DNA of 64,000 nt from Schmidtea nova (Eukaryota): positions 193,998,001 to 194,062,000 of the forward strand of contig CM097882.1 of the NCBI GenBank assembly GCA_044892505.1. Direction: 5' to 3'. The translations under genes were made by a program, and so were the position numbers. Under the pieces are notes generated by a model that saw nothing but the letters and a program-made list of their open reading frames with translations, ran no database searches and was not told the origin of the DNA. Below, piece after piece: positions 9,925 through 37,900 of the stretch (positions within the stretch are counted from its first letter, which is position 1; the number at the start of each line of letters is the position of its first letter).

Positions 9925-11950
9925 TTAACAAGATAACAAGTGGGCGATTTCGCATACTTCCTCTTTAGAGTTAATTTTTGGGTGTTTGTCTCTAATGAGA
10001 ATAGCTTCTTTAAGTCTAAGATTTTTTTCGTCGTTTTCATTTGTCAATATTCTCACTGATATTAATTTTTCCTTATTTTCTGTCTGACATTGGTGAAGAT
10101 GTCTATATACAAATGAATTTCCACTAGGATCAAGACGTTCTTTAATTCTCTGATGCAAAGTCCGAAGGGTGCTTCCGATGTAAATTTCTTCGCATTTATT
10201 ACACATGATGCTAAAGACAATGTTCTTGCGAAAGCATAATTTCTTTGGTGTTTGGAAATTTTCCATCCTACATGTATTTTCCTTTCTCGTGTTGTTAGCT
10301 AGAGCTTGCCTTAATGTCTTAGATCTATGTGCCAAACGAATCGGAAGGCCAGTGAGATTAAGTTCTTTGATGATCATGAAATTTATTCGGTCACTGATGA
10401 AAGGAATTCGAAGGTAGAAATATTTCTTTTCCTTTTGTAGGTCTTTCTGCCTTCTCTGGTTGAATTTTACTTTGTTGATCTCGTTAATATTATGGTATCC
10501 GTTACGATGCAGGACTTCTGTAAATATTCTTTGTTGTACTGAATTGTTCTCTTCATTTGTGCATCGATTAGCTATCCTTTGTCTCTCATTTCTAATGACG
10601 TTTACCTTCTGCAGATGAGGAAGTGCTGATCTTTGGTGCATAAATATTTCTTTGTGGGCTGATTTTCTGTAGAACCCATATGCTGGTGTGTCTGAGTTGA
10701 TATTTATTCTCAGATCCAATATTTCGAGGGATCCGTCTTCTTTCGGGTATTCAATCTCGAATTCTATGTCATTGTGTGCCGCGTTGAAGATACGAAATAT
10801 TTCTTCCGCTTCCATTTTGCTATTTGTCGTAATAAATATATCGTCTACATATCGTGCGTATATACCAATGGTATTTATGGTTATCAGTATTTGTTGTTCG
10901 AGATAATCCATGAATATAATCGCTAGTATGGCTGAAATACTAGAGCCCATTGACAGGTCTCTCACTTGATGGTATACTTTCTGTTCAAATGTAAAGTAGG
11001 TGTTTGCGAGAACTACAGTTAGAAGTTCAATTATGTCTTCTGTCTGCATCTCATTTATTGTAAGTTTACGTTTTTGTAACTTTCTTTCTAAACAATCTAT
11101 AGCATCTTTAGGGTGGATAGAGGTGTATAGGGATACCACATCGAGGCTAAAGGGATATTTGAATTTTGCATGGGTGTTTTTATCTGTTTTATTCAATTTT
11201 GACATAAGACAGTCACTGCTTTGAAGATGGTGTGGTACTTGGTCTAGCAGCGGTTTCAGAATTTTGGAAAGAAGCCAACTTACTTTGGTTGTTGGACGTT
11301 TTGTATTGGATACAATTGGTCTAATCTTGATCGCGGGACCTGTTTTGTTGGTTTTAATTAAACAGTAAAATTTTGGAAGGTCTGAGTTTTTTGTTATGAA
11401 ACCTTTGATAGAACTTTCTTTGATACCTCTTTTCCTGCTGATTCTTTTGAATACTTTGTTAATCTTTCCTTTAATGGTGTTTGCCGACATACGTTTCGTC
11501 TCTTTATATGTATTTGTATCGTTAAGGTGTTCGTAGGCTGCTTCACAATAACGGCTTTTCTCAATTATGCAAAATCACCTCCTTTGTCGCTTGGTAGGTA
11601 GATGTTTGGTTTGAGTTTAAGGGATTTCAAGGTAGCCTGCTCATAGGTCGATAAATTTAATTTGTATGGATTCATTTTCGCTTTTTCTATAATGCATACA
11701 ATTTTGTTGCAAACCTTTGATAGAGTCGAATCAAGTTCTGCATTAGGATAGGGAGTGTACACTCTATCTGTGTTTATATAGACAGGGAACTTATTCTGAT
11801 TATCAGTCTCAGATATGTGATCGTACCATTTGATTTGGTATGCTAATCGACATATGGCGGCTTTGATATTAAGTAGGATTTCATCAGTGATTTTGTTGTT
11901 TAAACTGAATTTTGGACCGAGTGATAGTAATCCTTTGTCATTGTTATCTA
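9925..11950 (-). CDS. Penelope-like reverse transcriptase + GIY-YIG endonuclease (one frameshift at ~11572)
   Basis: Motifs LLSLGPKF, PSDKG, PKFYCLIKT, RPIVS, SLDVVSLYTSI, MGSSIS, RYVDDIF, then CxxC-YIGST. A 1-nt loss in a T-run links ORF 11565-11950 to ORF 9925-11490. Confidence 0.9.
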
Positions 11951-12923
11951 ACAACAAACACTGATAACCATAAATACCATTGGTATACACGCACGATATG
12001 TAGACGATATATTTATTACGACAAATAGCAAAATGGAAGCGGAAGAAATATTTCGTATCTTCAACGCGGCACACAATGACATAGAATTCGAGATTGAATA
12101 CCCGAAAGAAGACGGATCCCTCGAAATATTGGATCTGAGAATAAATATCAACTCAGACACACCAGCATATGGGTTCTACAGAAAATCAGCCCACAAAGAA
12201 ATATTTATGCACCAAAGATCAGCACTTCCTCATCTGCAGAAGGTAAACGTCATTAGAAATGAGAGACAAAGGATAGCTAATCGATGCACAAATGAAGAGA
12301 ACAATTCAGTACAACAAAGAATATTTACAGAAGTCCTGCATCGTAACGGATACCATAATATTAACGAGATCAACAAAGTAAAATTCAACCAGAGAAGGCA
12401 GAAAGACCTACAAAAGGAAAAGAAATATTTCTACCTTCGAATTCCTTTCATCAGTGACCGAATAAATTTCATGATCATCAAAGAACTTAATCTCACTGGC
12501 CTTCCGATTCGTTTGGCACATAGATCTAAGACATTAAGGCAAGCTTTAGCTAACAACACGAGAAAGGAAAATACATGTAGGATGGAAAATTTCCAAACAC
12601 CAAAGAAATTATGCTTTCGCAAGAACATTGTCTTTAGCATCATGTGTAATAAATGCGAAGAAATTTACATCGGAAGCACCCTTCGGACTTTGCATCAGAG
12701 AATTAAAGAACGTCTTGATCCTAGTGGAAATTCATCTGTATATAGACATCTTCACCAATGTCAGACAGAAAATAAGGAAAAATTAATATCAGTGAGAATA
12801 TTGACAAATGAAAACGACGAAAAAAATCTTAGACTTAAAGAAGCTATTCTCATTAGAGACAAACACCCAAAAATTAACTCTAAAGAGGAAGTATGCGAAA
12901 TCGCCCACTTGTTATCTTGTTAA
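11950..12923 (+). pseudogene. 5'-truncated inverted copy of the PLE ORF (YVDD, thumb, GIY-YIG)
   Basis: Translation is near-identical to the C-terminal ~300 aa of the - strand ORF (e.g. PSGNSSVY vs PSGNSFVY). Confidence 0.9.
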
Positions 12924-13509: not shown

Positions 13510-15285
13510 TATTGTTTAAAGAAATTTTGATCTATAGTCATCATTATGGGAATTATTGATATTATTATTAAAAAAAGATCAAANNNNNNNNNNNNNNNNN
13601 NNNNNNNNNNNNNNNNNNNNNNNNNNNNNNNNNNNNNNNNNNNNNNNNNNNNNNNNNNNNNNNNNNNNNNNNNNNNNNNNNNNNNNNNNNNNNNNNNNNN
13701 NNNNNNNNNNNNNNNNNNNNNNNNNNNNNNNNNNNNNNNNNNNNNNNNNNNNNNNNNNNNNNNNNNNNNNNNNNNNNNNNNNNNNNNNNNNNNNNNNNNN
13801 NNNATTAGTTAATCTTTAATTTAATTTATTTTTTATTTTTAATTTATTTTTTGTTAATATTTTGGGAGCTACTTTTTACATGAGCACAAAAACGTGCGTA
13901 TTTTTTACATGATCCAAAAATTCTGCAATAATTTTTTTACAAAAGATAATTTAATTTTAGAAAAAGCTTAATTACAAAAACAAATTTATTAAAACACCTT
14001 GCGATCGGTTTATTATTCGTTTTTTTATTCGTAAATTTTACCTATAAAACTTTTGTGATATTTTGTTCTGCTTGTAATGCCTAGAAAAATAATCAATGCA
14101 ATTCGGCAAATACAATAAATAATACTATTTTCATTAAATACAAATCTTCCAAGATTTTGAATTTAAAGATTTTTGGGAAGATGCTAAATTCGATTAGAAC
14201 ATAATTGAAAAAACAAAAAAAATTAATATTTATTTGTTTTCACTATTTATTTCCATATCTTAGTTGAATTAAGTTAGAAACTCAACATATTCATCAGCAC
14301 TGACTGAATGTGGTCCGTGACGTCAGCAATTGAAAGTTGTGGCTACCCATTTTATAATGAATTTGATAAGTTTTAGGGAATCAAACTTTTGGCCTTATAT
14401 AATGTTAGTACTGTTATGTGTAAGTTTTTAGATTATTTTAGATAATTAACTTCATATTAATTTTGTTAAGAAATTTATTAAGAAAAACATTTAGAAAAGT
14501 AAAAAACTAACGTTTGATTGTTATCAAACTTAGAAAATTTAATCATTAAAGTTTTGCATTAGAATTCTTTTTATATTTTTAATTTAATCTATCGATTTGT
14601 AAATATTTTTAATTATAAAGTGAATAATAACTCGTCTATATATATTTGACATCGTAAATTAACAATTGACTCATGGTTAATTTATTTTTATTACCTTAAT
14701 TAATTAATGACTGAACGCACTTTTTTGAAATATTTATGAAAAATTGTTTACTTACATTAACGTAGGCGTTGTGAAAAAATATTCTTAAAATTTCAGTTAC
14801 AAGTAACTAAACTATTTAGCCACAAAAAATGTCAAAGAGCCGCAATTTGAGCACCCATGGTATATAGTTATATAGTATACATATCATTCTTTTATAATTT
14901 GAAACACCGCAGCGGTTTCAAATACAATCTTATGTATTTTACAGATGCCTTAAAACTACAATTATAAATCATACATTGGCACGATAGATAATGTGGCCAC
15001 CAACTAAGTAACCAGAAGCCTTTCAGGGATTTGATTGGGATGTCAAATGCGAACTTGTATATTCTTGCATATTCTTGTATATTCTTCAAATTTTATAAAT
15101 ATTTATATTTAAAGAAATAAAAATTTTCAAGATATTTCCTTATTTAACCAACTATAATAAAAATAGTTTAATATTTCAAAAAATTTAAATTTAAAATAAG
15201 ACTGACTAAAATTTATCAATTGTTATATATTATTTAAAATATTTTATCTACTAAAACAACAAAATATTTATTTTAAAAACCTCAT

Positions 15286-16002
15286 TTAGTCATCAAATAA
15301 ATGGCTTATATCTTCAAAATTTAAACGTGACTCAGAACTATTTATTCCCAGGATATTTTCTAATGAAACAGATTCGTGAGTTTCTTGGTTTTCAAAAAGA
15401 AAATTTATTGGAATAAGTTTATGAGCGGTAGCGAATTTGCAGGCCAAATTAGCTAAAATACCTGCTCTTGCTAAATCTTCGGTAATAATTTTAATTCTGC
15501 CGCTATTATAAAAGATGACTGTTTCTTTAAAATCACCATTTTTTAAACCTTTGCTGTTAGGATCTGCTTGATAAACAACGTAGTGAGGTGCTTCTGTGTC
15601 GAAACTAAACTTATATGGATCAATTTTGCTTAAACTGTCTAGGTTTATTCTATGATTAACACTGAAAGTAGTGAAAATATTCGTTTGACGATAGTCTCTC
15701 AGCATTACCGGGATTCCATTTTTCTGAAGTCTTCTTGCTACCTTCCTTGCAATTTGCTTAGCAATATCTAAAGATTTGGCCCCTCTAATTATTAAAGCCC
15801 CAGATCTAAATATAATAACTTCTTTGCACTCAGGATAATAGATATTAGAATTTGTTGAAACAAATTCAATTTTAGCGTACGGTTGGTTAGAATTATAGGT
15901 GACGTTTCTGAAATGTTCAATTACGTTTTCCAGCTCAATCGATTTATAAGATAGTTTCGCTGCTGCATTGACGCAGTAAATCTTCAATTTTATTGTTTCC
16001 AT
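15286..16002 (-). CDS. TBP-like: Divergent TATA-binding-protein family protein (TBP-related factor), 238 aa, intronless
   Basis: Two TBP repeats: IIFRSGALIIRGAKS...ARKVARRLQKNG (cf. LIFSSGKMVCTGAKS...ARKYARVVQKLG) and TNIFT...VIFYNSGRI. Uninterrupted ATG-to-stop ORF with an acidic C-terminal extension. Confidence 0.85.
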   Translation of the reverse strand: METIKLKIYCVNAAAKLSYKSIELENVIEHFRNVTYNSNQPYAKIEFVSTNSNIYYPECKEVIIFRSGALIIRGAKSLDIAKQIARKVARRLQKNGIPVMLRDYRQTNIFTTFSVNHRINLDSLSKIDPYKFSFDTEAPHYVVYQADPNSKGLKNGDFKETVIFYNSGRIKIITEDLARAGILANLACKFATAHKLIPINFLFENQETHESVSLENILGINSSESRLNFEDISHLFDD

Positions 16003-16269
16003 TTATTTTAATATTTAAATTGTTGGAAAATAAATCATATCTTGATAATAATTTATATTTGTCTGAAACATGATTGGCTAGAAATAAAAAATAATGAAAT
16101 CAAAAATTATAAATTAAAACATTATTTGATCAGTAAATTAATAAGAGTTTCATTTAAAACTATATTTATAATTTAAAATGAATAAGAAAATTATAAAATG
16201 AAATTTTAATAAAGTTAAAGTTAATTTTAACAAATTTTAAATTATTGTTTACTTAAAATTAAAAATATT

Positions 16270-16720
16270 TCAATCTGGGGTTATTCTCCTGGGTATCCCT
16301 TCAGCACTATTTTTGAACCAACACTGGTTTGTATAATGACCAATTTTCTTGCAATGTTCACACTGAATAACTCCAGATCTCTCAGCGCCTTGAAGATTAC
16401 GGCTTGATCTATTTACATTTACCTCGTTTCTCCCTTTGGGTGATGGGCTTTTCGAACATCGGAAATTTATTTTCTGGCTCCCAACTGTTTTGGGTTGGGT
16501 TAATTGATTTTTCTATTTGAACTGGAATAACCGCGAATACATCAGATTTGTTTTAGTGCTCTTTAATTTAATTCAATTTTCATTGCCTTTTTAACTAATT
16601 CATCAAAATTGTCATAATCGACACAGAATAATACCATTTTTATCTCTTTATTTATTCCGGACGAAAATTGGTCTTGAATTAGCTCCTGCATATGTTGGGC
16701 AAAAACTGAGAGTTGTTTGA
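16270..16720 (-). pseudogene. LTR-retrotransposon gag relic with CCHC zinc knuckle
   Basis: LIQDQFSSGI...FDELVKKAMKIE, then after stops/frameshifts CEHCKKIGHYTNQC (16321-16362). Confidence 0.65.
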
Positions 16721-31932: not shown

Positions 31933-34900
31933 GTGTCTATTTCATTTTTTGGTTAAATACATATTATCTCCAAGAGACGTCACAAGTTAACTATTAATTT
32001 TAAAGCACAGAATAATCTGGTAATAAACGCATGACATTTATAAATTAAAGAAAATCATTAAATTTCCGCAGTGAATCACAACGTATGCAGGACCAGTAAT
32101 ATGAATAATGATTACTTTAAACATTAGTTAAATCTAATTATTTTTTGTTTTTGTTATTGCTATTATTATTATATTTCAATACTGCAAACTTTAAAAGATA
32201 CACAAATAAATTGTTGATTTTACTTCAATACGATGCAGATGTGATGAAATATTACTTTTTATTTTAAATGTTAATATAAGTAGTTTCATTAATTCATTAA
32301 AAATGCTTAAATTCTATCATCTGAACTTGAAAATGTTAAATATTTATATTATGAAAACCAGAATTTAGTGTATTTAATATCAAGATTTTTAAAAGGGATT
32401 TACATAGTTAGTGATGTCTCATTTTCTATATTTAAGTCATTATTATTATTATTGTTATTGTTATTGTTATTATTTCTTATTTAGATAAACATTGATCCAA
32501 AAATAATGCAGTGTACGCTTAATACTTTACCAGTTGAAGCTAATTTGCTTTCAAAAAGCAGATTACCTCTCGGAGTTCATATCCAACCATTTAAAGACAG
32601 TGATATTATCACCGTTTCTACAAATTCCGTAGTCAGATGCAGACCATGTAGAACTTATATAAATCCTTATGTTACTTTAACTGATAATCAAAGACGCTGG
32701 CATTGTAACGTCTGTGGTAAAGTAAACGATATACCTGATGAGTTTATGTACGATCCAACCACCAAAGTAAATTGAAATTCAATTTTTAGTAAATTACTGT
32801 TTATGATGTTAAATTTTTTTACAATAATGTTACATTTACCACTTTTTAATTCACCGGATGATGTATTAGGTTGGAAGGAAAGTTCTGTCGTATTATAAAT
32901 AGGCGTGGCTGATGAGCTATTTTCTGAATTTTATTTATTAAAAAATTTAATTTTATATAATAAATCAGTTTATTATTTGTTTTATGATATAAAATTAAAT
33001 TTTTAATAGCGTCCGTTAGTTACTTGTGATATTTAAAGTGAAAATGATGTCAGTGGATAAAGTGCAATTACGACATTGTATTTTCTGAGTTCGAAGAAAA
33101 AAACAACGCTACGATTGCAAGTGAAAATATTTGTGTAGTATTTGGACGAGATGTTGTAAATGTTCGTACTTGTCAACGATGGTTTAGAAAATTTTGTTCC
33201 AAAGACTTGAGTCTAGAAGAAGATACTCGATCTGGACTACCATCTAAGATCGATAATGAAGTTTTGCGGTCTATGTTGGATCATAATCCACATCTAACAA
33301 CAAGACTAATTGGGGAATAACTCAGGATTTCTCATACAGTTGCTGGAGATCACATTACAGCAAGCCATTTGGATTCTACACGAAATGACTGAAAAAACTT
33401 GTTTGACCGTATAGGGATATGTTCATCACATCTCATAGAAACAATATGGTGCCGTTTCTGGATAAGCTGATTACTGGAGATTAAAAGTGGGTTCTTTTCG
33501 AAAATATCAAGAAGAGAAAAGTTTACTGCAAACCTGGAACATCATCAGCAACTCTTGCAAAACCAGATATTCATCAAAAGAAAGATCTGCTCTGTTTGTG
33601 GTGGGATAGAAAAAGACCAGCGTATTATGAGTTGTTAAAACAAGGACAAACGATTAATGTGAATGTATACTGCAACCAGCTCGATAAATTAAATGCAGCT
33701 ATCAAGGAAAAAAAGACTTGCATTGGCATCCAGAAATGGAATCTTGTTTCACCATGATAATGGTAGACCACATAATGCAATTTTGACATAAAAAAACTTA
33801 CTGCGTTGGGATGGGAAGTTCTTAGTCAGCCACCACATTCACCTAGCATTGCACCATCTGACTTTTACCTGTTCAGATCTCTGCAAAATTATCTAATGGG
33901 AAAAAAGTTAAATTCTTTCAAAGGTGTTTCTAAAGCAGTGGCTGAGTATTTTCAATCCAAGAACGAGAATTTTTATAGAAGCGGGATCGACTGGCTACCT
34001 GAAAGATGATAACAAGTGGATACAAATAATGGAAATTATATTATTGAAAAAAATTAAATATATATTTTTTAAAATTGATTTAAATGTTTTCTTGAAAATG
34101 CGACAGAACTTTTCTTCCAACCTAATAGTTTTCGTACTTAGATGATGTCACATATATTAGGAGGAGTCTAAAAGTTGAAAAATGTGACAAAGGGAGGAAG
34201 TTTTATCAAATGTGATGTCACATTTTTTTAGTTTTTTTTTTGGAAAATAATCGTTCCGATTTCGGCATTGAAGAATAAAAATTTATACCATTAGAAAATA
34301 TATTAGGGATAATGATGTGACGACAAATGATCAATTTCCTGTCATTATTGTTATTGCGAAGACGAAATTAAAAGTATTTGTCATTGGCATTTCAATTCTC
34401 TTATTTATTGAAAATGTAAGTAAAGTGTGTATTTTTCAGTTCCAAAAAGAATAAAAGAACAATATTATAATTCCTCTTAATTACAGAACGGACAAAAATG
34501 AACGTTTTCAACCATTCATATGAGTACTATTTTTTCATATATAAATGTTAATTTTGCTGGATTCGTACCTGTTAGAAGGGTAATCCCAAATAAATTCTTA
34601 CCAATAAAAATATGATGTCACAAAGGTGTCGGGGTTGTTGAGAAAATGACTTGAAAAAATATTGATTACCAAGATAAAAAACTTTCATAAAAACTTTCGC
34701 ACAAAAAGAAACGCTGTTTAAGACTAATAAAGGTTAATTAAAGTTGGTGGAGGTGTTAAAATTAATATTTATTGCGAAAACATGTTTTAAAAAATTATTA
34801 CATTTAATAATAATAATAATAATAAAAAGTTCGATTTTTAATTAATTTATGAAATAAGTTTTCTCTCCGCTTATAAGGGAATTTCTTTTATAAGGAAGAG

Positions 34901-37900
34901 TAAAATATACAATCATAATTTATTTAGAGTTTTTAAAATTAATCAAAACAACATTACCATAATAATATTACTATTATATAAAGTAAATTAATCATATTAG
35001 ATGGTTTAATATTCACTATTTTGTTGTCTTGCGACATTTTTATTTGAATTTATAACTTCTTTAATATTTTTTTGCTATCGCTTATAAGAGAATTATCATC
35101 CTTCTAATTCAGCTTGATTTATTTAAGTTAGTAAATGCATAAATGGGATGGAAACTAAAAAAAGTATATTGAAGTAGACAACAAAACAGTATGTGTGGAA
35201 ATATTGCTTGTAGATAGTTTAACATTGACTAAAGACGAGAATACAATTATGAAAGACCCTCATAAAAAATTTGAGTTGTTAAAAGCGAAATTGATAAAAC
35301 TGAAAAATGAATTTTATATTGTGTCACCGGAAATAGTTCAGATCTTTATGAAGGTTGAAAATGGATGTAATGAAGAGATAAATAAATGGTTTTATAAGTT
35401 CAACCTGTTTTTATTCCATTTTTTTAAATCGACTATAAAGGAAATCTCTTATAAATGGAAAGATTTTATTTGTCCTTAAGTTCCATTATAAGCAGGAAAC
35501 ACTGTATTAACAAAAATATCAGATATTGATGAGTATATTATTTCTGAAAGTGAGGAAGATAGTGATGAAAGTGATATAGAATTTTTTTCAAAGGATGGGA
35601 CGGAATTGAAAAAGGAAGAAATCTTCACTACTAGACCACGCATAACAAATAGTTAAAGAAAACAAAGGGCCAACATCTTGCGTAAATACATCACTGTTCC
35701 ACTCAAACTGATCGTGAAAAAGTTTTTATAGCCATTTTTGTCTAATTTTTCAATAATTCAAATGTTTTTGTTACATTTGTATCAGTCTTTGTAATCCGAG
35801 TGTTAACAAAACTACTGTAATACTTAATAAAATCTGTCATTAAATACTTTATCTTTATCCGTCCCTTGGCCTAATTGGACCAAAGAAAAATTTTTCTCAT
35901 TGAATTTATGTGGAATATTTTATTTTCTATTTGAACTTATAAAAAAATAAATCACCAAGAAAAACTTATAATACATTGCTTTTTAATAGAAATCCATATT
36001 TGGGTGTATTTTCACTCAAGGACTATACAGTTATTTATTTTAAAGGACGGATGAAGGTTAATAACCTAATAATTTTAGTAAGTTTAACTATGTTCGAATT
36101 AATTGAAAACAAAGAAAAATTCGGAGTCAATTTTCTTTTGAGTGTTTAAAGCAATTAACACGAGATAAAGATTATTTTAAAACAATGAACAGAATATTTT
36201 GATGATTTGAAATACCAACAAAACATTTAATTTAATTTTGTCATATAATTCTCAGTCATAATATCAACTAATATTTATTGAATTCCTTGACCTTTTCAAT
36301 TGAATATTATGTGAATCATATTTAGATGCTATAGTTCACTGTTAACAATTATTTTCACGTACTGTTTCATAATAATGATAATGAATACTATGCAGTATTT
36401 AGTTTTTAAATCGTTCAGGATAAGGTTTTCTCTAATTTACAAATTTTTTTATAAAGATTTATGCATAAATGAAAAATTAATTAATTCGCAGTCATACGGT
36501 AATCCTTCTCAAAGACCGGAACTGAAATATAGTAGCATTGAATATACAGCAAATTCAGAATACACGGTTCGTCCACCAATGTGTACTATGTATGTATTCC
36601 TGTTAGACGTGAGCAAAGCTGCAATCTCTAGTGGTTATTTAAGTCATGCTTGCAAAATTATCATTGAAAACTTAAAAAAAATGCCTGGTGATAGTAGAAC
36701 TCAAATAGCATTTTTTACTTATAGCTCAGTTTTAAATTTTTATCAAATAAGGGGTTAGTGCTAATAATTTTATAAATAACTTTTTCAATATATTATCAGA
36801 TAATTCTTATAAAACTCTCATTTGGACTGATATCGATGAAATAGATTTACCACTATCAGAAGATTTATTGGTAAATCTTCAAGATCGAAAAGATATTATT
36901 CTAGAATTTCTTGAAAACTTACCTTCAAATTTCCTTGCTACGAATGATTCCGGAAATTGTTTGGGATTTGCGATTCAGGTATTGCATTTTTGTTTGATTC
37001 GAGAATTCATGTTTCTTATAATATAGCTTTTTATATATTTCGTTTATTTTCATTCTTTCAGATTATAGATCAAAATTTATTCTATTTAACACAAATTTTC
37101 GACACTGCCTTCAAATAATAACATTTAGAAAAAGGTCACATTGAAAATATTTTTGATCGATTATCTGAAAGAATGATAATAAACGATATCGTAAATAATT
37201 GATCAAATGTGTAGATTAAAGATTTTTTTTATGTAGATTAATTTGGTCCATAAAACTACAAATATCCGAATCGCTCTATGGTTCACCTATTATTCAGTTC
37301 GTTTCTTTAAAAAAATTGTAACTGAGAAATCGTAAATTTTCGTCGCTTTTATTTTTTTCAGACATTAGATTAAAATCTTTTCTATTGAAATTAAAAATTG
37401 GCTATGAAAATGAAAATGATTCAAACTTAAAAACAACTAAATCTAATAGTTTATAAAATAGTCTCACGGTAAAGTAACATTTTGTATTTGAAGCAATACG
37501 ATTACTTAAAATTGATTCATTGAATTGAAATTTACAGACAAAAAACGTTTTTCAGTATGGGTTTTTGGTTTTTTAGGGTTTTTCAGCCAGGATTATGTCA
37601 TTGATATCCTAAAACATAATCAACATGAGCGCCTTTTGGTGACTTGTTGATGACTTTATCTTCTTAGAACATACCTCTTCAGACAGTTTTCACTCTTCAG
37701 ATTCCCGCTATACTATAGACGTCGATTTAGCGTGTTAGCAGTCAAAAAACTTTGCACGAAGCGAGAGCATAATTTTCTTATGCCACTTTCACTGAGTAAA
37801 ATAAATAAATAATGCCTTTACTTACATTCAAACGAATTGTTAGCTCTCTGCTTGTAATTTTCCTCTCAGCCTTAACAATTATTTCCAGGTCTTCCGTTAT

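What the first reader, a model, noticed from the sequence alone, without database searches (positions are those of the whole stretch)
15286..16002. Intronless, strongly remodelled TBP-family protein
Seen by manual alignment to canonical TBP: three of the four DNA-intercalating Phe are replaced (KRF>NQP, ELF>EAP, IFVSG>FYNSG) and only the repeat-1 IFRSG Phe is kept. The first conserved Asn (QNIV) is Cys (YCVN). Both repeats carry ~8-9 aa insertions at the equivalent loop, and there is a ~40 aa acidic tail. The basic helix ARKVARRLQK and the acidic stirrup (DTE) are retained. Established: TRF2/TLF also lack most Phe and do not bind TATA, but they retain the repeat-2 Phe, a different pattern. Inference: a lineage-specific TBP paralog (possibly a retrogene, since neighbouring SEC24 has introns) with altered DNA recognition. 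The ORF is intact in a TE graveyard, which suggests selection.
Basis: partly seen in the sequence, partly recalled or inferred. Interest (0 to 1): 0.75.

Follow-up and report, generated by a model that had tools for sequence, protein, structure and literature searches.

The report
Very divergent TRF2-like TBP gene
An intact, intron-free gene in a transposon-rich stretch of an AT-rich animal genome encodes a complete but heavily altered TATA-binding-protein fold that is most likely a fast-evolved member of the known TRF2/TLF (TBP-like 1) branch, not a new kind of TBP.

Summary
It is predicted to fold into a complete two-repeat TBP saddle (pLDDT 84; TM 0.84-0.90 to solved TBPs). The four DNA-kinking Phe positions read P41 / F65 / P139 / Y165. 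The first minor-groove Asn is Cys10. Both repeats carry an extra loop (+7 and +9 residues), and a roughly 40-residue acidic tail follows.

This Phe pattern is the TRF2/TLF pattern with aromatic swaps; a rotifer TRF2 has exactly lost/F/lost/Y. ML trees put the protein and its one close relative (P0001, 41% identity, also intronless) inside the TRF2/TLF clade (98/99). A TRF2 profile outscores a TBP profile for every family member. The two rare loop insertions are each shared with a TRF2-type protein. An AU test, however, cannot reject a TBP-side placement (p 0.38).

No Polinton or viral neighbours or affinity were found. This scan has noted Polinton-borne mini-TBP genes elsewhere in the genome; I could not compare them.

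Verdict: a strongly derived variant of a known kind, of moderate interest.

The parts
15286..16002 (-). Complete single-exon CDS (238 codons plus TAA) of the TBP-family protein
15718..15990 (-). TBP repeat 1 (about residues 5-95): S1 with C10 in place of the first minor-groove Asn; P41 at Phe1; F65 at Phe2; basic helix H2 (ARKVARRLQK)
15823..15861 (-). Repeat-1 insertion in the S3-S4 loop (about residues 48-60). It contains YPECKEV, which is identical in P0001. A +7 length is seen only in the query, P0001 and P0013 among 108 rows
15424..15708 (-). TBP repeat 2 (about residues 99-193): N108 kept; stirrup D135-T136-E137-A138; P139 at Phe3; Y165 at Phe4
15523..15564 (-). Repeat-2 insertion in the S3'-S4' loop (about residues 147-160; motif P..K.G.K..[DE][FY]K), shared with P0001 and P0010
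15289..15408 (-). Acidic, low-confidence C-terminal tail (about residues 199-238). P0001, P0010 and P0134 also have an acidic-hydrophobic C-terminal tail
16052..16077 (-). Candidate core promoter, by inference only: AGCCAATCA at -75 and TATAAA at -55 from the ATG. L001 also has a CCAAT, at -92
   Evidence: about 0.35 CCAAT expected per 440 nt at this composition, so weak
15267..15272 (-). AATAAA 13 nt after the stop codon (candidate poly(A) signal; common in AT-rich DNA)

Best explanation
The ORF is a functional, single-exon gene for a highly derived member of the TRF2/TLF (TBPL1) branch of the TBP family, in a fast-evolving, AT-rich animal lineage. It keeps the TBP saddle, the basic H2 helix and the N-terminal stirrup strand, which are the surfaces TBP and TRF2 use for TFIIA. 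It has lost the two outer DNA-kinking Phe and one of the two central Asn.

I therefore infer that it does not bind TATA boxes. Like TRF2, it would be brought to TATA-less promoters through protein partners (TFIIA or ALF, perhaps TFIIB) and nucleate a Pol II pre-initiation complex there. The two conserved extra loops and the acidic tail are probably added partner-binding or regulatory surfaces.

Shown here: the fold, the residue states, constraint on the ORF, and affinity to TRF2-type sequences. Inferred: all the biochemistry, expression, and whether this is the genome's only TRF2 or an extra (retro)copy.
For: - Fold.
- TRF2 affinity, trees: the quick 108-row tree puts the family with named TBPL1/TLF proteins (SH-aLRT 90). 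The 54-row tree gives 100 (quick) and 98/99 (careful, PMSF C20) for the clade of 12 TRF2 rows plus the 3 family members.
- Names for clade members come from sources: TBPL1 of Mesocestoides, Schistocephalus and Notodromas.
- Profiles: TRF2-HMM vs TBP-HMM bits are 77.8/61.2 for the query, 83.7/38.4 for P0001 and 107.1/63.0 for P0010. Leave-one-out controls separate true TRF2s from true TBPs cleanly.
- BLASTP: after P0001, the best pairwise hits are flatworm TLFs (P0007 1.6e-16, P0016 2.4e-15) and Brachionus TRF2.
- Rare indels: the +7 loop in repeat 1 is shared only with P0001 and P0013. P0013 is exon 1 of a two-exon TRF2-like gene with cellular neighbours (L002). The +9 loop in repeat 2 is shared with P0001 and P0010, and P0010 has the TRF2 Trp.
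- The Phe pattern equals the TRF2 pattern with aromatic swaps (signature as defined in PMC4180970).
- Constraint: ORF chance is 1.6e-8. P0001 has the same start, both loops and a tail. dN is 0.51-0.58 with dS saturated. GC3 of 0.26 matches the host SEC24 exon at 0.29.
- TRF2 is known to evolve about 5x faster than TBP (PMC4180970) and is only 40-45% identical among metazoans (PMC3142196).
Against: - The AU test does not reject query+P0001 grouped with eukaryotic TBPs (delta lnL 4.4, p 0.38). The 98/99 support therefore mostly reflects the TRF2 core, and the pair sits on a very long branch (6.6 plus 1.7-3.8), so long-branch attraction is possible.
- Of 14 TBP-vs-TRF2 diagnostic columns, the query has 3 TRF2 states, 3 TBP states and 8 other.
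- Phe2 is F, not the TRF2 Trp.
- The TFIIB-stirrup acidic pair is kept here but not in P0001.
- At 78 bits against the TRF2 profile, it lies far below bona fide TRF2s (105-300 bits).
- Expression is untested.
Confidence: 0.62

Rival explanations
1. It is a lineage-specific extra TBP-family paralog, possibly a retrogene copied from TRF2 or TBP mRNA. It coexists with ordinary TBP and TRF2 and has taken on a specialised role, for example in the germline. It overlaps with the best explanation if the parent was TRF2.
For: - The gene is intronless, while relatives of the family have introns. L002 has a roughly 70-nt intron between the repeats. L003 shows a splice acceptor just before helix H2'.
- The neighbouring SEC24 has at least 4 introns.
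- It sits alone in TE debris, about 12 kb from the nearest host gene.
- Its divergence is extreme compared with TRF2s.
- AU cannot exclude a TBP-side origin.
Against: - No poly(A) tract or target-site duplication was seen on reading the flanks; no dedicated search was run.
- P0001, from another species, is also intronless with the same architecture. Any retroposition is therefore old, and the copy may simply be the lineage's TRF2.
- No second TRF2 from this lineage turned up, though the genome itself could not be searched.
Confidence: 0.25
2. It is a TBP gene of viral or mobile-element origin (Polinton/Maverick or a giant virus), either left behind by a decayed element or domesticated.
For: - Earlier notes of this scan report many Polintons in this genome carrying their own roughly 155-159-aa TBP-like gene.
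- A Polinton polB fragment lies in the same window.
- Public data do contain a Polinton-like element with a TBP gene (L005).
Against: - No Polinton genes lie within several kb. The neighbours are retroelement and hAT fragments.
- The region 13851-16560 is single-copy in the window.
- The public Polinton TBP P0049 prefers the TBP profile (150 vs 87 bits), the opposite of the query, and is not near it in the tree.
- Viral fold matches are weaker than cellular TBP: E 3e-9 and TM 0.5-0.7 against E 3e-12 and TMt 0.84-0.90.
- No IMG/VR relative was found.
- Family relatives sit in spliced cellular genes.
- At 238 aa with a tail, it differs in length from the roughly 156-aa element genes.
Confidence: 0.08
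3. It is a recent, not yet decayed pseudogene copy with no function of its own.
For: It lies in a TE-rich intergenic region.
Against: - The complete ORF has a start right before S1, as in P0001, and a confidently folded core.
- Codon composition is host-like.
- A candidate CCAAT/TATA pair and an AATAAA are present.
- The family has kept the same architecture across saturated synonymous divergence.
Confidence: 0.05

Closest known systems
TRF2 / TLF / TBPL1 (TBP-related factor 2) of bilaterian animals
   Same: - The two-repeat TBP saddle.
- Loss of Phe1 and Phe3, with aromatic residues kept at Phe2 and Phe4.
- An AR[KR]VAR.LQK-type H2 helix (9 of 10 residues identical to ostracod TBPL1 P0091).
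- A Y-R at the start of S1'.
- A better fit to the TRF2 profile, and ML placement inside the TRF2 clade.
- A fast evolutionary rate.
- Acidic C-terminal extensions also occur in flatworm TLFs.
   Different: - Only 21-30% identity to any TRF2.
- Phe2 is F rather than W (as in Brachionus P0009 and P0013).
- Asn1 is Cys.
- Extra conserved loops in both S3-S4 hairpins.
- Intronless.
- The TRF2 profile score is far below that of ordinary members.
- AU cannot exclude a non-TRF2 position.
Canonical TBP (TFIID subunit)
   Same: The fold, the second central Asn (N108), the N-terminal stirrup N..YN, F at the Phe2 position, and the D/E pair in the C-terminal stirrup.
   Different: Two of the four intercalating Phe are replaced by Pro and one by Tyr. 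One central Asn is replaced by Cys. Core identity is about 22%. Both repeats carry insertions.
Polinton/Maverick- and giant-virus-encoded TBP-like proteins
   Same: A TBP fold in a divergent, intronless gene. The same genome is reported to hold Polinton TBP genes.
   Different: There is no element context. The profile preference is opposite to the one public Polinton TBP examined (P0049). The protein is longer and has a tail. Its relatives lie in spliced cellular genes.
Protist TBPs with lost Phe (trypanosome TRF4/TBP, dinoflagellate TLF)
   Same: Independent loss of TATA-intercalating Phe residues (PMC4180970).
   Different: Those are the sole TBP-family gene of non-animal lineages. This gene comes from an animal: its SEC24 is of the SEC24A/B type.

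Membership tests
TBP superfamily (PF00352 fold) | Two tandem TBP repeats forming the saddle | tested here: met
   Pfam E 3.8e-12. AF2 pLDDT 84 with a full S1-H1-S2-S5-H2 x2 topology. Foldseek TMt 0.84-0.90 to TBP structures.
Canonical TBP | Four conserved DNA-intercalating Phe and two central Asn | tested here: not met
   The states are P41, F65, P139, Y165, C10 and N108.
TRF2/TLF/TBPL1 | Phe1 and Phe3 altered (signature of Duttke et al. 2014, PMC4180970) | tested here: met
   Both are Pro; signature text.
TRF2/TLF/TBPL1 | Phe2 replaced (typically Trp) and Phe4 retained | tested here: not met
   F65 is kept and Phe4 is Y165. The same F/Y states occur in Brachionus TRF2 P0009. P0010 has W and P0001 has F/F. 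The strict signature fails, but the aromatic pattern is the same.
TRF2/TLF/TBPL1 | Groups phylogenetically with TRF2 to the exclusion of TBP | tested here: inconclusive
   ML support for the clade is 90, 100 and 98/99. AU does not reject a TBP-side placement (p 0.38) or a position as sister to TRF2 (p 0.46).
TRF2/TLF/TBPL1 | Fits a TRF2 profile better than a TBP profile | tested here: met
   +16.6 bits for the query, +45 for P0001 and +44 for P0010. Controls separate cleanly.
TRF2/TLF/TBPL1 | Absence of the Leu208 equivalent (TAF1 inhibition site) | tested here: inconclusive
   Ile63 here, Gln in P0001 and P0010. Leu is gone, but a hydrophobic residue is kept in the window protein.
TRF2/TLF/TBPL1 | Binds TFIIA and TFIIB, does not bind TATA, and acts at TATA-less promoters | not testable with these tools
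   Only the residue states at the stirrups and H2 could be read.
TRF2/TLF/TBPL1 | Orthology: the single TRF2 locus of the genome | not testable with these tools
   The genome outside the window cannot be searched. The findings look-ups gave no TRF2 or TLF note.
Polinton/viral TBP | Lies inside an element with integrase, capsid, ATPase and polB genes | tested here: not met
   Neighbours are retroelement and hAT debris. Compare L005, a real Polinton-like context.
Processed retrogene | Intronless copy of an intron-bearing parent, with a poly(A) tract and target-site duplication | tested here: inconclusive
   It is intronless, while relatives L002 and L003 have introns. No poly(A) tract or TSD was noticed on reading, but no dedicated TSD search was run. 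The parent copy is not searchable.

The most novel reading that the evidence does not exclude
A small, previously undescribed subfamily of TBP-fold factors (window gene, P0001; possibly P0010/P0134). Both S3-S4 hairpins have grown conserved loops (YPECKEV and G.K..[DE][FY]K) opposite the classical stirrups, and an acidic tail has been added. This would give a TATA-independent initiation factor with new partner or DNA-flank contacts. It may have replaced TRF2 in its lineage after retroposition, or it may work beside TRF2, for example in the germline.
Probability: 0.25. Interest if true: 0.6.

Novelty: new variant of a known kind. Interest (0 to 1): 0.4.

Why it matters
TRF2/TLF shows how animals built a second, TATA-independent Pol II initiation system from a TBP duplicate. 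This gene is one of the most derived versions seen. About 15 billion public proteins contain one clear relative (P0001, 41% identity) and two more distant putative members (P0010, P0134), linked by a shared insertion and tail. It keeps the saddle and helix H2 but rewires the DNA face and adds two conserved loops.

If expressed, it marks which parts of the TBP fold are truly indispensable. It could also reveal new contact surfaces. The same genome is noted to hold Polinton-borne TBP genes, which raises the question of exchange between host and element transcription factors. If instead it is simply the lineage's fast-evolving TRF2, it is an annotation point of modest interest.

Tried and rejected
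- Word-index protein search with the ORF found no hit. The same search with the family alignment found only P0001, P0010 and P0134.
- Exact-sequence look-up of the ORF found nothing on record.
- The IMG/VR scan and the JGI metagenome scan found no relatives.
- The Rfam scan of the window found nothing that could hint at the organism.
- The look-up of earlier findings by sequence was blank.
- Paper searches for the accession numbers and for Polinton plus TBP gave nothing useful.
No run ids were available, read laying was not used, and there is no expression evidence.
- A flank comparison between the window locus and L001 found only short AT-rich chance matches.
- The count of diagnostic columns was indecisive for the query.
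- Pairwise dN/dS is unreliable because dS is saturated.
- The organism could not be named. The SEC24 exon is 65% identical to a contig of run SRR33002330, which also holds the P0010-like P0134. That contig has GC3 0.93 against 0.29 here.
- Spliced models (the SEC24 exons and the two exons of the L002 gene) were examined exon by exon and were not joined.
- I considered and rejected a chance ORF, a Polinton cargo gene and canonical TBP.

Full report
**1. What is there**

The minus strand of 15286-16002 carries a 238-codon ORF. It starts at an ATG directly preceded by an in-frame TAA, and an AATAAA follows 13 nt after the stop.

The window has 27-29% G+C and a stop-codon frequency of 0.072 per codon. 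An open stretch of this length has a chance of 1.6e-8 per start, so about 0.002 are expected in the window. No shuffle of the local 2.7 kb exceeded 166 codons.

The ORF's G+C (0.325, GC3 0.26) resembles the neighbouring SEC24 exon (0.344, GC3 0.29). The stretch 13851-16560 has no second copy in the window.

**2. Fold**

- Pfam TBP scores E 3.8e-12.
- The best solved relatives by sequence are plant, yeast and human TBP, at E about 1e-10.
- An AlphaFold2 model built on a 58-row alignment (A2) has mean pLDDT 84.1 and pTM 0.76. It shows the full S1-H1-S2-S3-S4-S5-H2 topology twice.
- Foldseek aligns about 196 columns to TBP structures at rmsd 2.3-2.6 A and TMt 0.84-0.90.
- Viral TBP-like models match less well: E 3e-9, TM 0.5-0.7.
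- Confidence drops only in residues 47-60 and 146-160 and in the tail after about residue 205.

**3.

The alignments and the model's strand positions give these states:

| Canonical position | State here |
|---|---|
| Phe1 | P41 |
| Phe2 | F65 |
| Phe3 | P139 |
| Phe4 | Y165 |
| Asn1 | C10 |
| Asn2 | N108 |

One automatic alignment shifted Phe1 onto F47. The model's S3 strand (Y42-E46) supports P41.

The loop between S3 and S4 is longer in both repeats. Anchor-to-anchor lengths are 33 and 35, against a mode of 26 in 108 family rows. The tail has 9 acidic and 2 basic residues.

**4. Relatives**

The exhaustive phmmer search of 1.84 billion representatives found 133 hits, but only one close one. 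That hit is P0001: 251 aa, 41% identity, E 2e-33. It lies on a 1.9-kb, 25.5% G+C metagenome contig (L001) and is likewise a single uninterrupted ORF.

P0001 shares several features with the window protein:
- a start just before S1;
- both loop insertions (YPECKEV is identical in the two proteins);
- an acidic-hydrophobic tail.

P0010 (UniParc only, N-terminally truncated) and its partial ortholog P0134 (Logan run SRR33002330, L003) share the repeat-2 insertion and the tail. In L003 the match to P0010 starts just after a splice acceptor (...ttcag), so an intron precedes the codon of the matching Ser.

P0013 is the first exon of a two-exon TRF2-like gene, with a roughly 70-nt GT-AG intron between the repeats. 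It sits among cellular genes (SID-1, an acyltransferase) on an NCBI assembly contig. It alone shares the repeat-1 +7 insertion, the NVNAA start of S1 and the NVTY...AK.E stretch.

**5. TRF2 or TBP?**

Source names identify TBPL1/TLF proteins among the better hits: Mesocestoides, Schistocephalus and the ostracod Notodromas. Trematode, rotifer, acanthocephalan and moth proteins cluster with them.

*Evidence for TRF2*

- In a 108-row quick tree the three family members join these proteins (SH-aLRT 90).
- In a 54-row tree the clade of 12 TRF2 rows plus 3 family members gets 100 (quick) and UFBoot 98 / SH-aLRT 99 (careful, LG+C20 PMSF).
- Within that clade, query+P0001 (100/99) sit next to P0013 (56/90), and P0010 sits next to the flatworm TLFs (82/78).
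- HMMs built from the two labelled sets favour TRF2 for all three members. The bit scores are 77.8 vs 61.2, 83.7 vs 38.4 and 107.1 vs 63.0. Leave-one-out controls are clean.
- After P0001, the best BLASTP partners are flatworm TLFs and the Brachionus TRF2.
- The Phe states of TRF2-clade proteins are lost / W (F in Brachionus P0009 and P0013) / lost / F (Y in Brachionus). The window protein therefore has the TRF2 pattern with conservative swaps.
- Duttke et al. define TRF2 by alteration of three Phe, with Phe2 changed to Trp, and report a rate about 5x that of TBP (PMC4180970). In a genome this AT-rich, a TGG-to-TTT change at Phe2 runs with the mutational bias. That last point is my inference.

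*Limits*

- The pair sits on a very long branch.
- AU tests do not reject TRF2 alone as a clade (p 0.46).
- They do not reject the family grouped with the flatworm TLFs (p 0.405).
- Importantly, they do not reject query+P0001 grouped with eukaryotic TBPs (delta lnL 4.4, p 0.381).
- Of 14 diagnostic columns, the query has 3 TRF2, 3 TBP and 8 other states.
- Its 78 bits on the TRF2 profile lie far below ordinary TRF2s (105-300 bits).

I therefore put TRF2 descent at roughly 0.6-0.7, not at certainty.

**6. Mobile-element rival**

Earlier notes of this scan report many Polintons in this genome with their own TBP-like gene of 468-480 nt. I could not obtain those sequences.

- *Context:* no Polinton gene lies near the ORF. 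Its neighbours are a Penelope pair (9.9-12.9 kb), a decayed gag with a CX2CX4HX4C knuckle (about 16.28-16.83 kb, same strand), an LTR-element protease and RT (19.7-20.8 kb) and hAT (20.9-21.7 kb).
- *Sequence:* one public Polinton-like element does carry a 170-aa TBP next to an rve-chromo integrase, a double-jelly-roll capsid, an A32-type ATPase and PC4 (L005). That protein prefers the TBP profile (150 vs 87 bits) and is not near the query in the tree.

**7. Host context**

SEC24 runs on the plus strand. A probable N/P/Y-rich first exon lies at about 28.16-28.78 kb. Mapped exons are at 32485-32766, 36486-36981, 40035-40707 and 45161-46069. These exons were searched singly and were not joined.

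The gene is of the animal SEC24A/B type: E 1e-41 to human SEC24A against 1e-18 to yeast. The TBP-like gene lies about 12 kb upstream of it on the other strand.

Its proteins are absent from the collections. The nearest SEC24 exon (65% identity) comes from run SRR33002330, but that contig has GC3 0.93.

**8. Selection and retrogene question**

Against P0001, dN is 0.51-0.58 and dS is saturated (1.3-5). The ratio is below 1 but not reliable.

Conservation of the ORF, the start, both loops and the tail across that divergence argues for long-term constraint on the gene lineage.

The retrogene idea rests on two facts. The gene lacks introns, while relatives (L002, L003) and the neighbour SEC24 have them. 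No poly(A) tract or target-site duplication was seen on reading the flanks. P0001 is intronless too, so any retroposition is old. The copy may simply be the lineage's TRF2.

**9. Function (inferred)**

Phe1, Phe3 and one central Asn are gone, so TATA recognition is unlikely.

Several surfaces are retained:
- the basic H2 helix;
- the N-terminal stirrup strand (N33..Y36 N37), which is the TFIIA side;
- D135 and E137 in the C-terminal stirrup, which is the TFIIB side. These two are not kept in P0001.

The best-supported mechanism is TRF2-like. Partners such as TFIIA or ALF would recruit it to TATA-less promoters. The conserved extra loops and the acidic tail would act as added interaction or autoregulatory elements. 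A germline role is a guess by analogy with TRF2 (PMC3142196).

**10. Not done**

- The genome outside the window could not be searched.
- N runs were left untouched.

Noticed in passing
L005:1-9452 (Logan SRR29986445): A public Polinton-like element carries a compact 170-aa TBP gene (P0049). Its neighbours are a PC4-domain gene, an rve+chromo integrase, a DJR capsid-like gene and an A32-type ATPase. This independently shows that Polinton-type elements can encode TBP.
   Followed up: partly
L002:3577-4330 (NCBI GCA_029979625.1): A two-exon TRF2-like gene with a roughly 70-nt intron between the repeats. Its repeat-1 S3-S4 loop has the same +7 insertion as the window protein. Its repeat 2 has no insertion and reads Gly at Phe4. 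The annotated product (P0013) stops at the exon 1 end.
   Followed up: partly
window:28160-46072 (+): A SEC24A/B-type gene with large TE-filled introns. A probable N/P/Y-rich first exon lies at about 28.16-28.78 kb, and mapped exons lie at 32485-32766, 36486-36981, 40035-40707 and 45161-46069. The last exon is 65% identical to a contig with GC3 0.93 from run SRR33002330. That is a striking difference in composition between related organisms.
   Followed up: partly
window:9925-12923: Two Penelope-like ORFs lie head to head: RT+GIY-YIG on the minus strand at 9925-11490 and GIY-YIG on the plus strand at 12033-12923. This suggests inverted or nested Penelope copies.
   Followed up: no
window:20966-21509: A 272-nt unit is duplicated in tandem at 99% identity inside a hAT transposase remnant, within its C-terminal dimerisation region.
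   Followed up: no
window:16280-16835 (-): A decayed gag-like remnant with an intact CX2CX4HX4C zinc knuckle lies directly upstream of the TBP-like gene, on the same strand.
   Followed up: no
P0008, P0056, P0110 (teleost proteins): Three fish proteins labelled 'TBP-like' or 'TBPL1' by their sources do not fall in the TRF2 clade. They sit on long branches outside it, two together and the third nearby but unresolved. They may represent a separate teleost TBP paralog or mis-predicted genes.
   Followed up: no
L001:1440-1885: The contig carrying P0001 ends in what looks like a transposase-like (mariner-type) fragment. The closest relative may therefore also sit in TE-rich, AT-rich DNA. This comes from reading the sequence only and was not scanned.
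   Followed up: no
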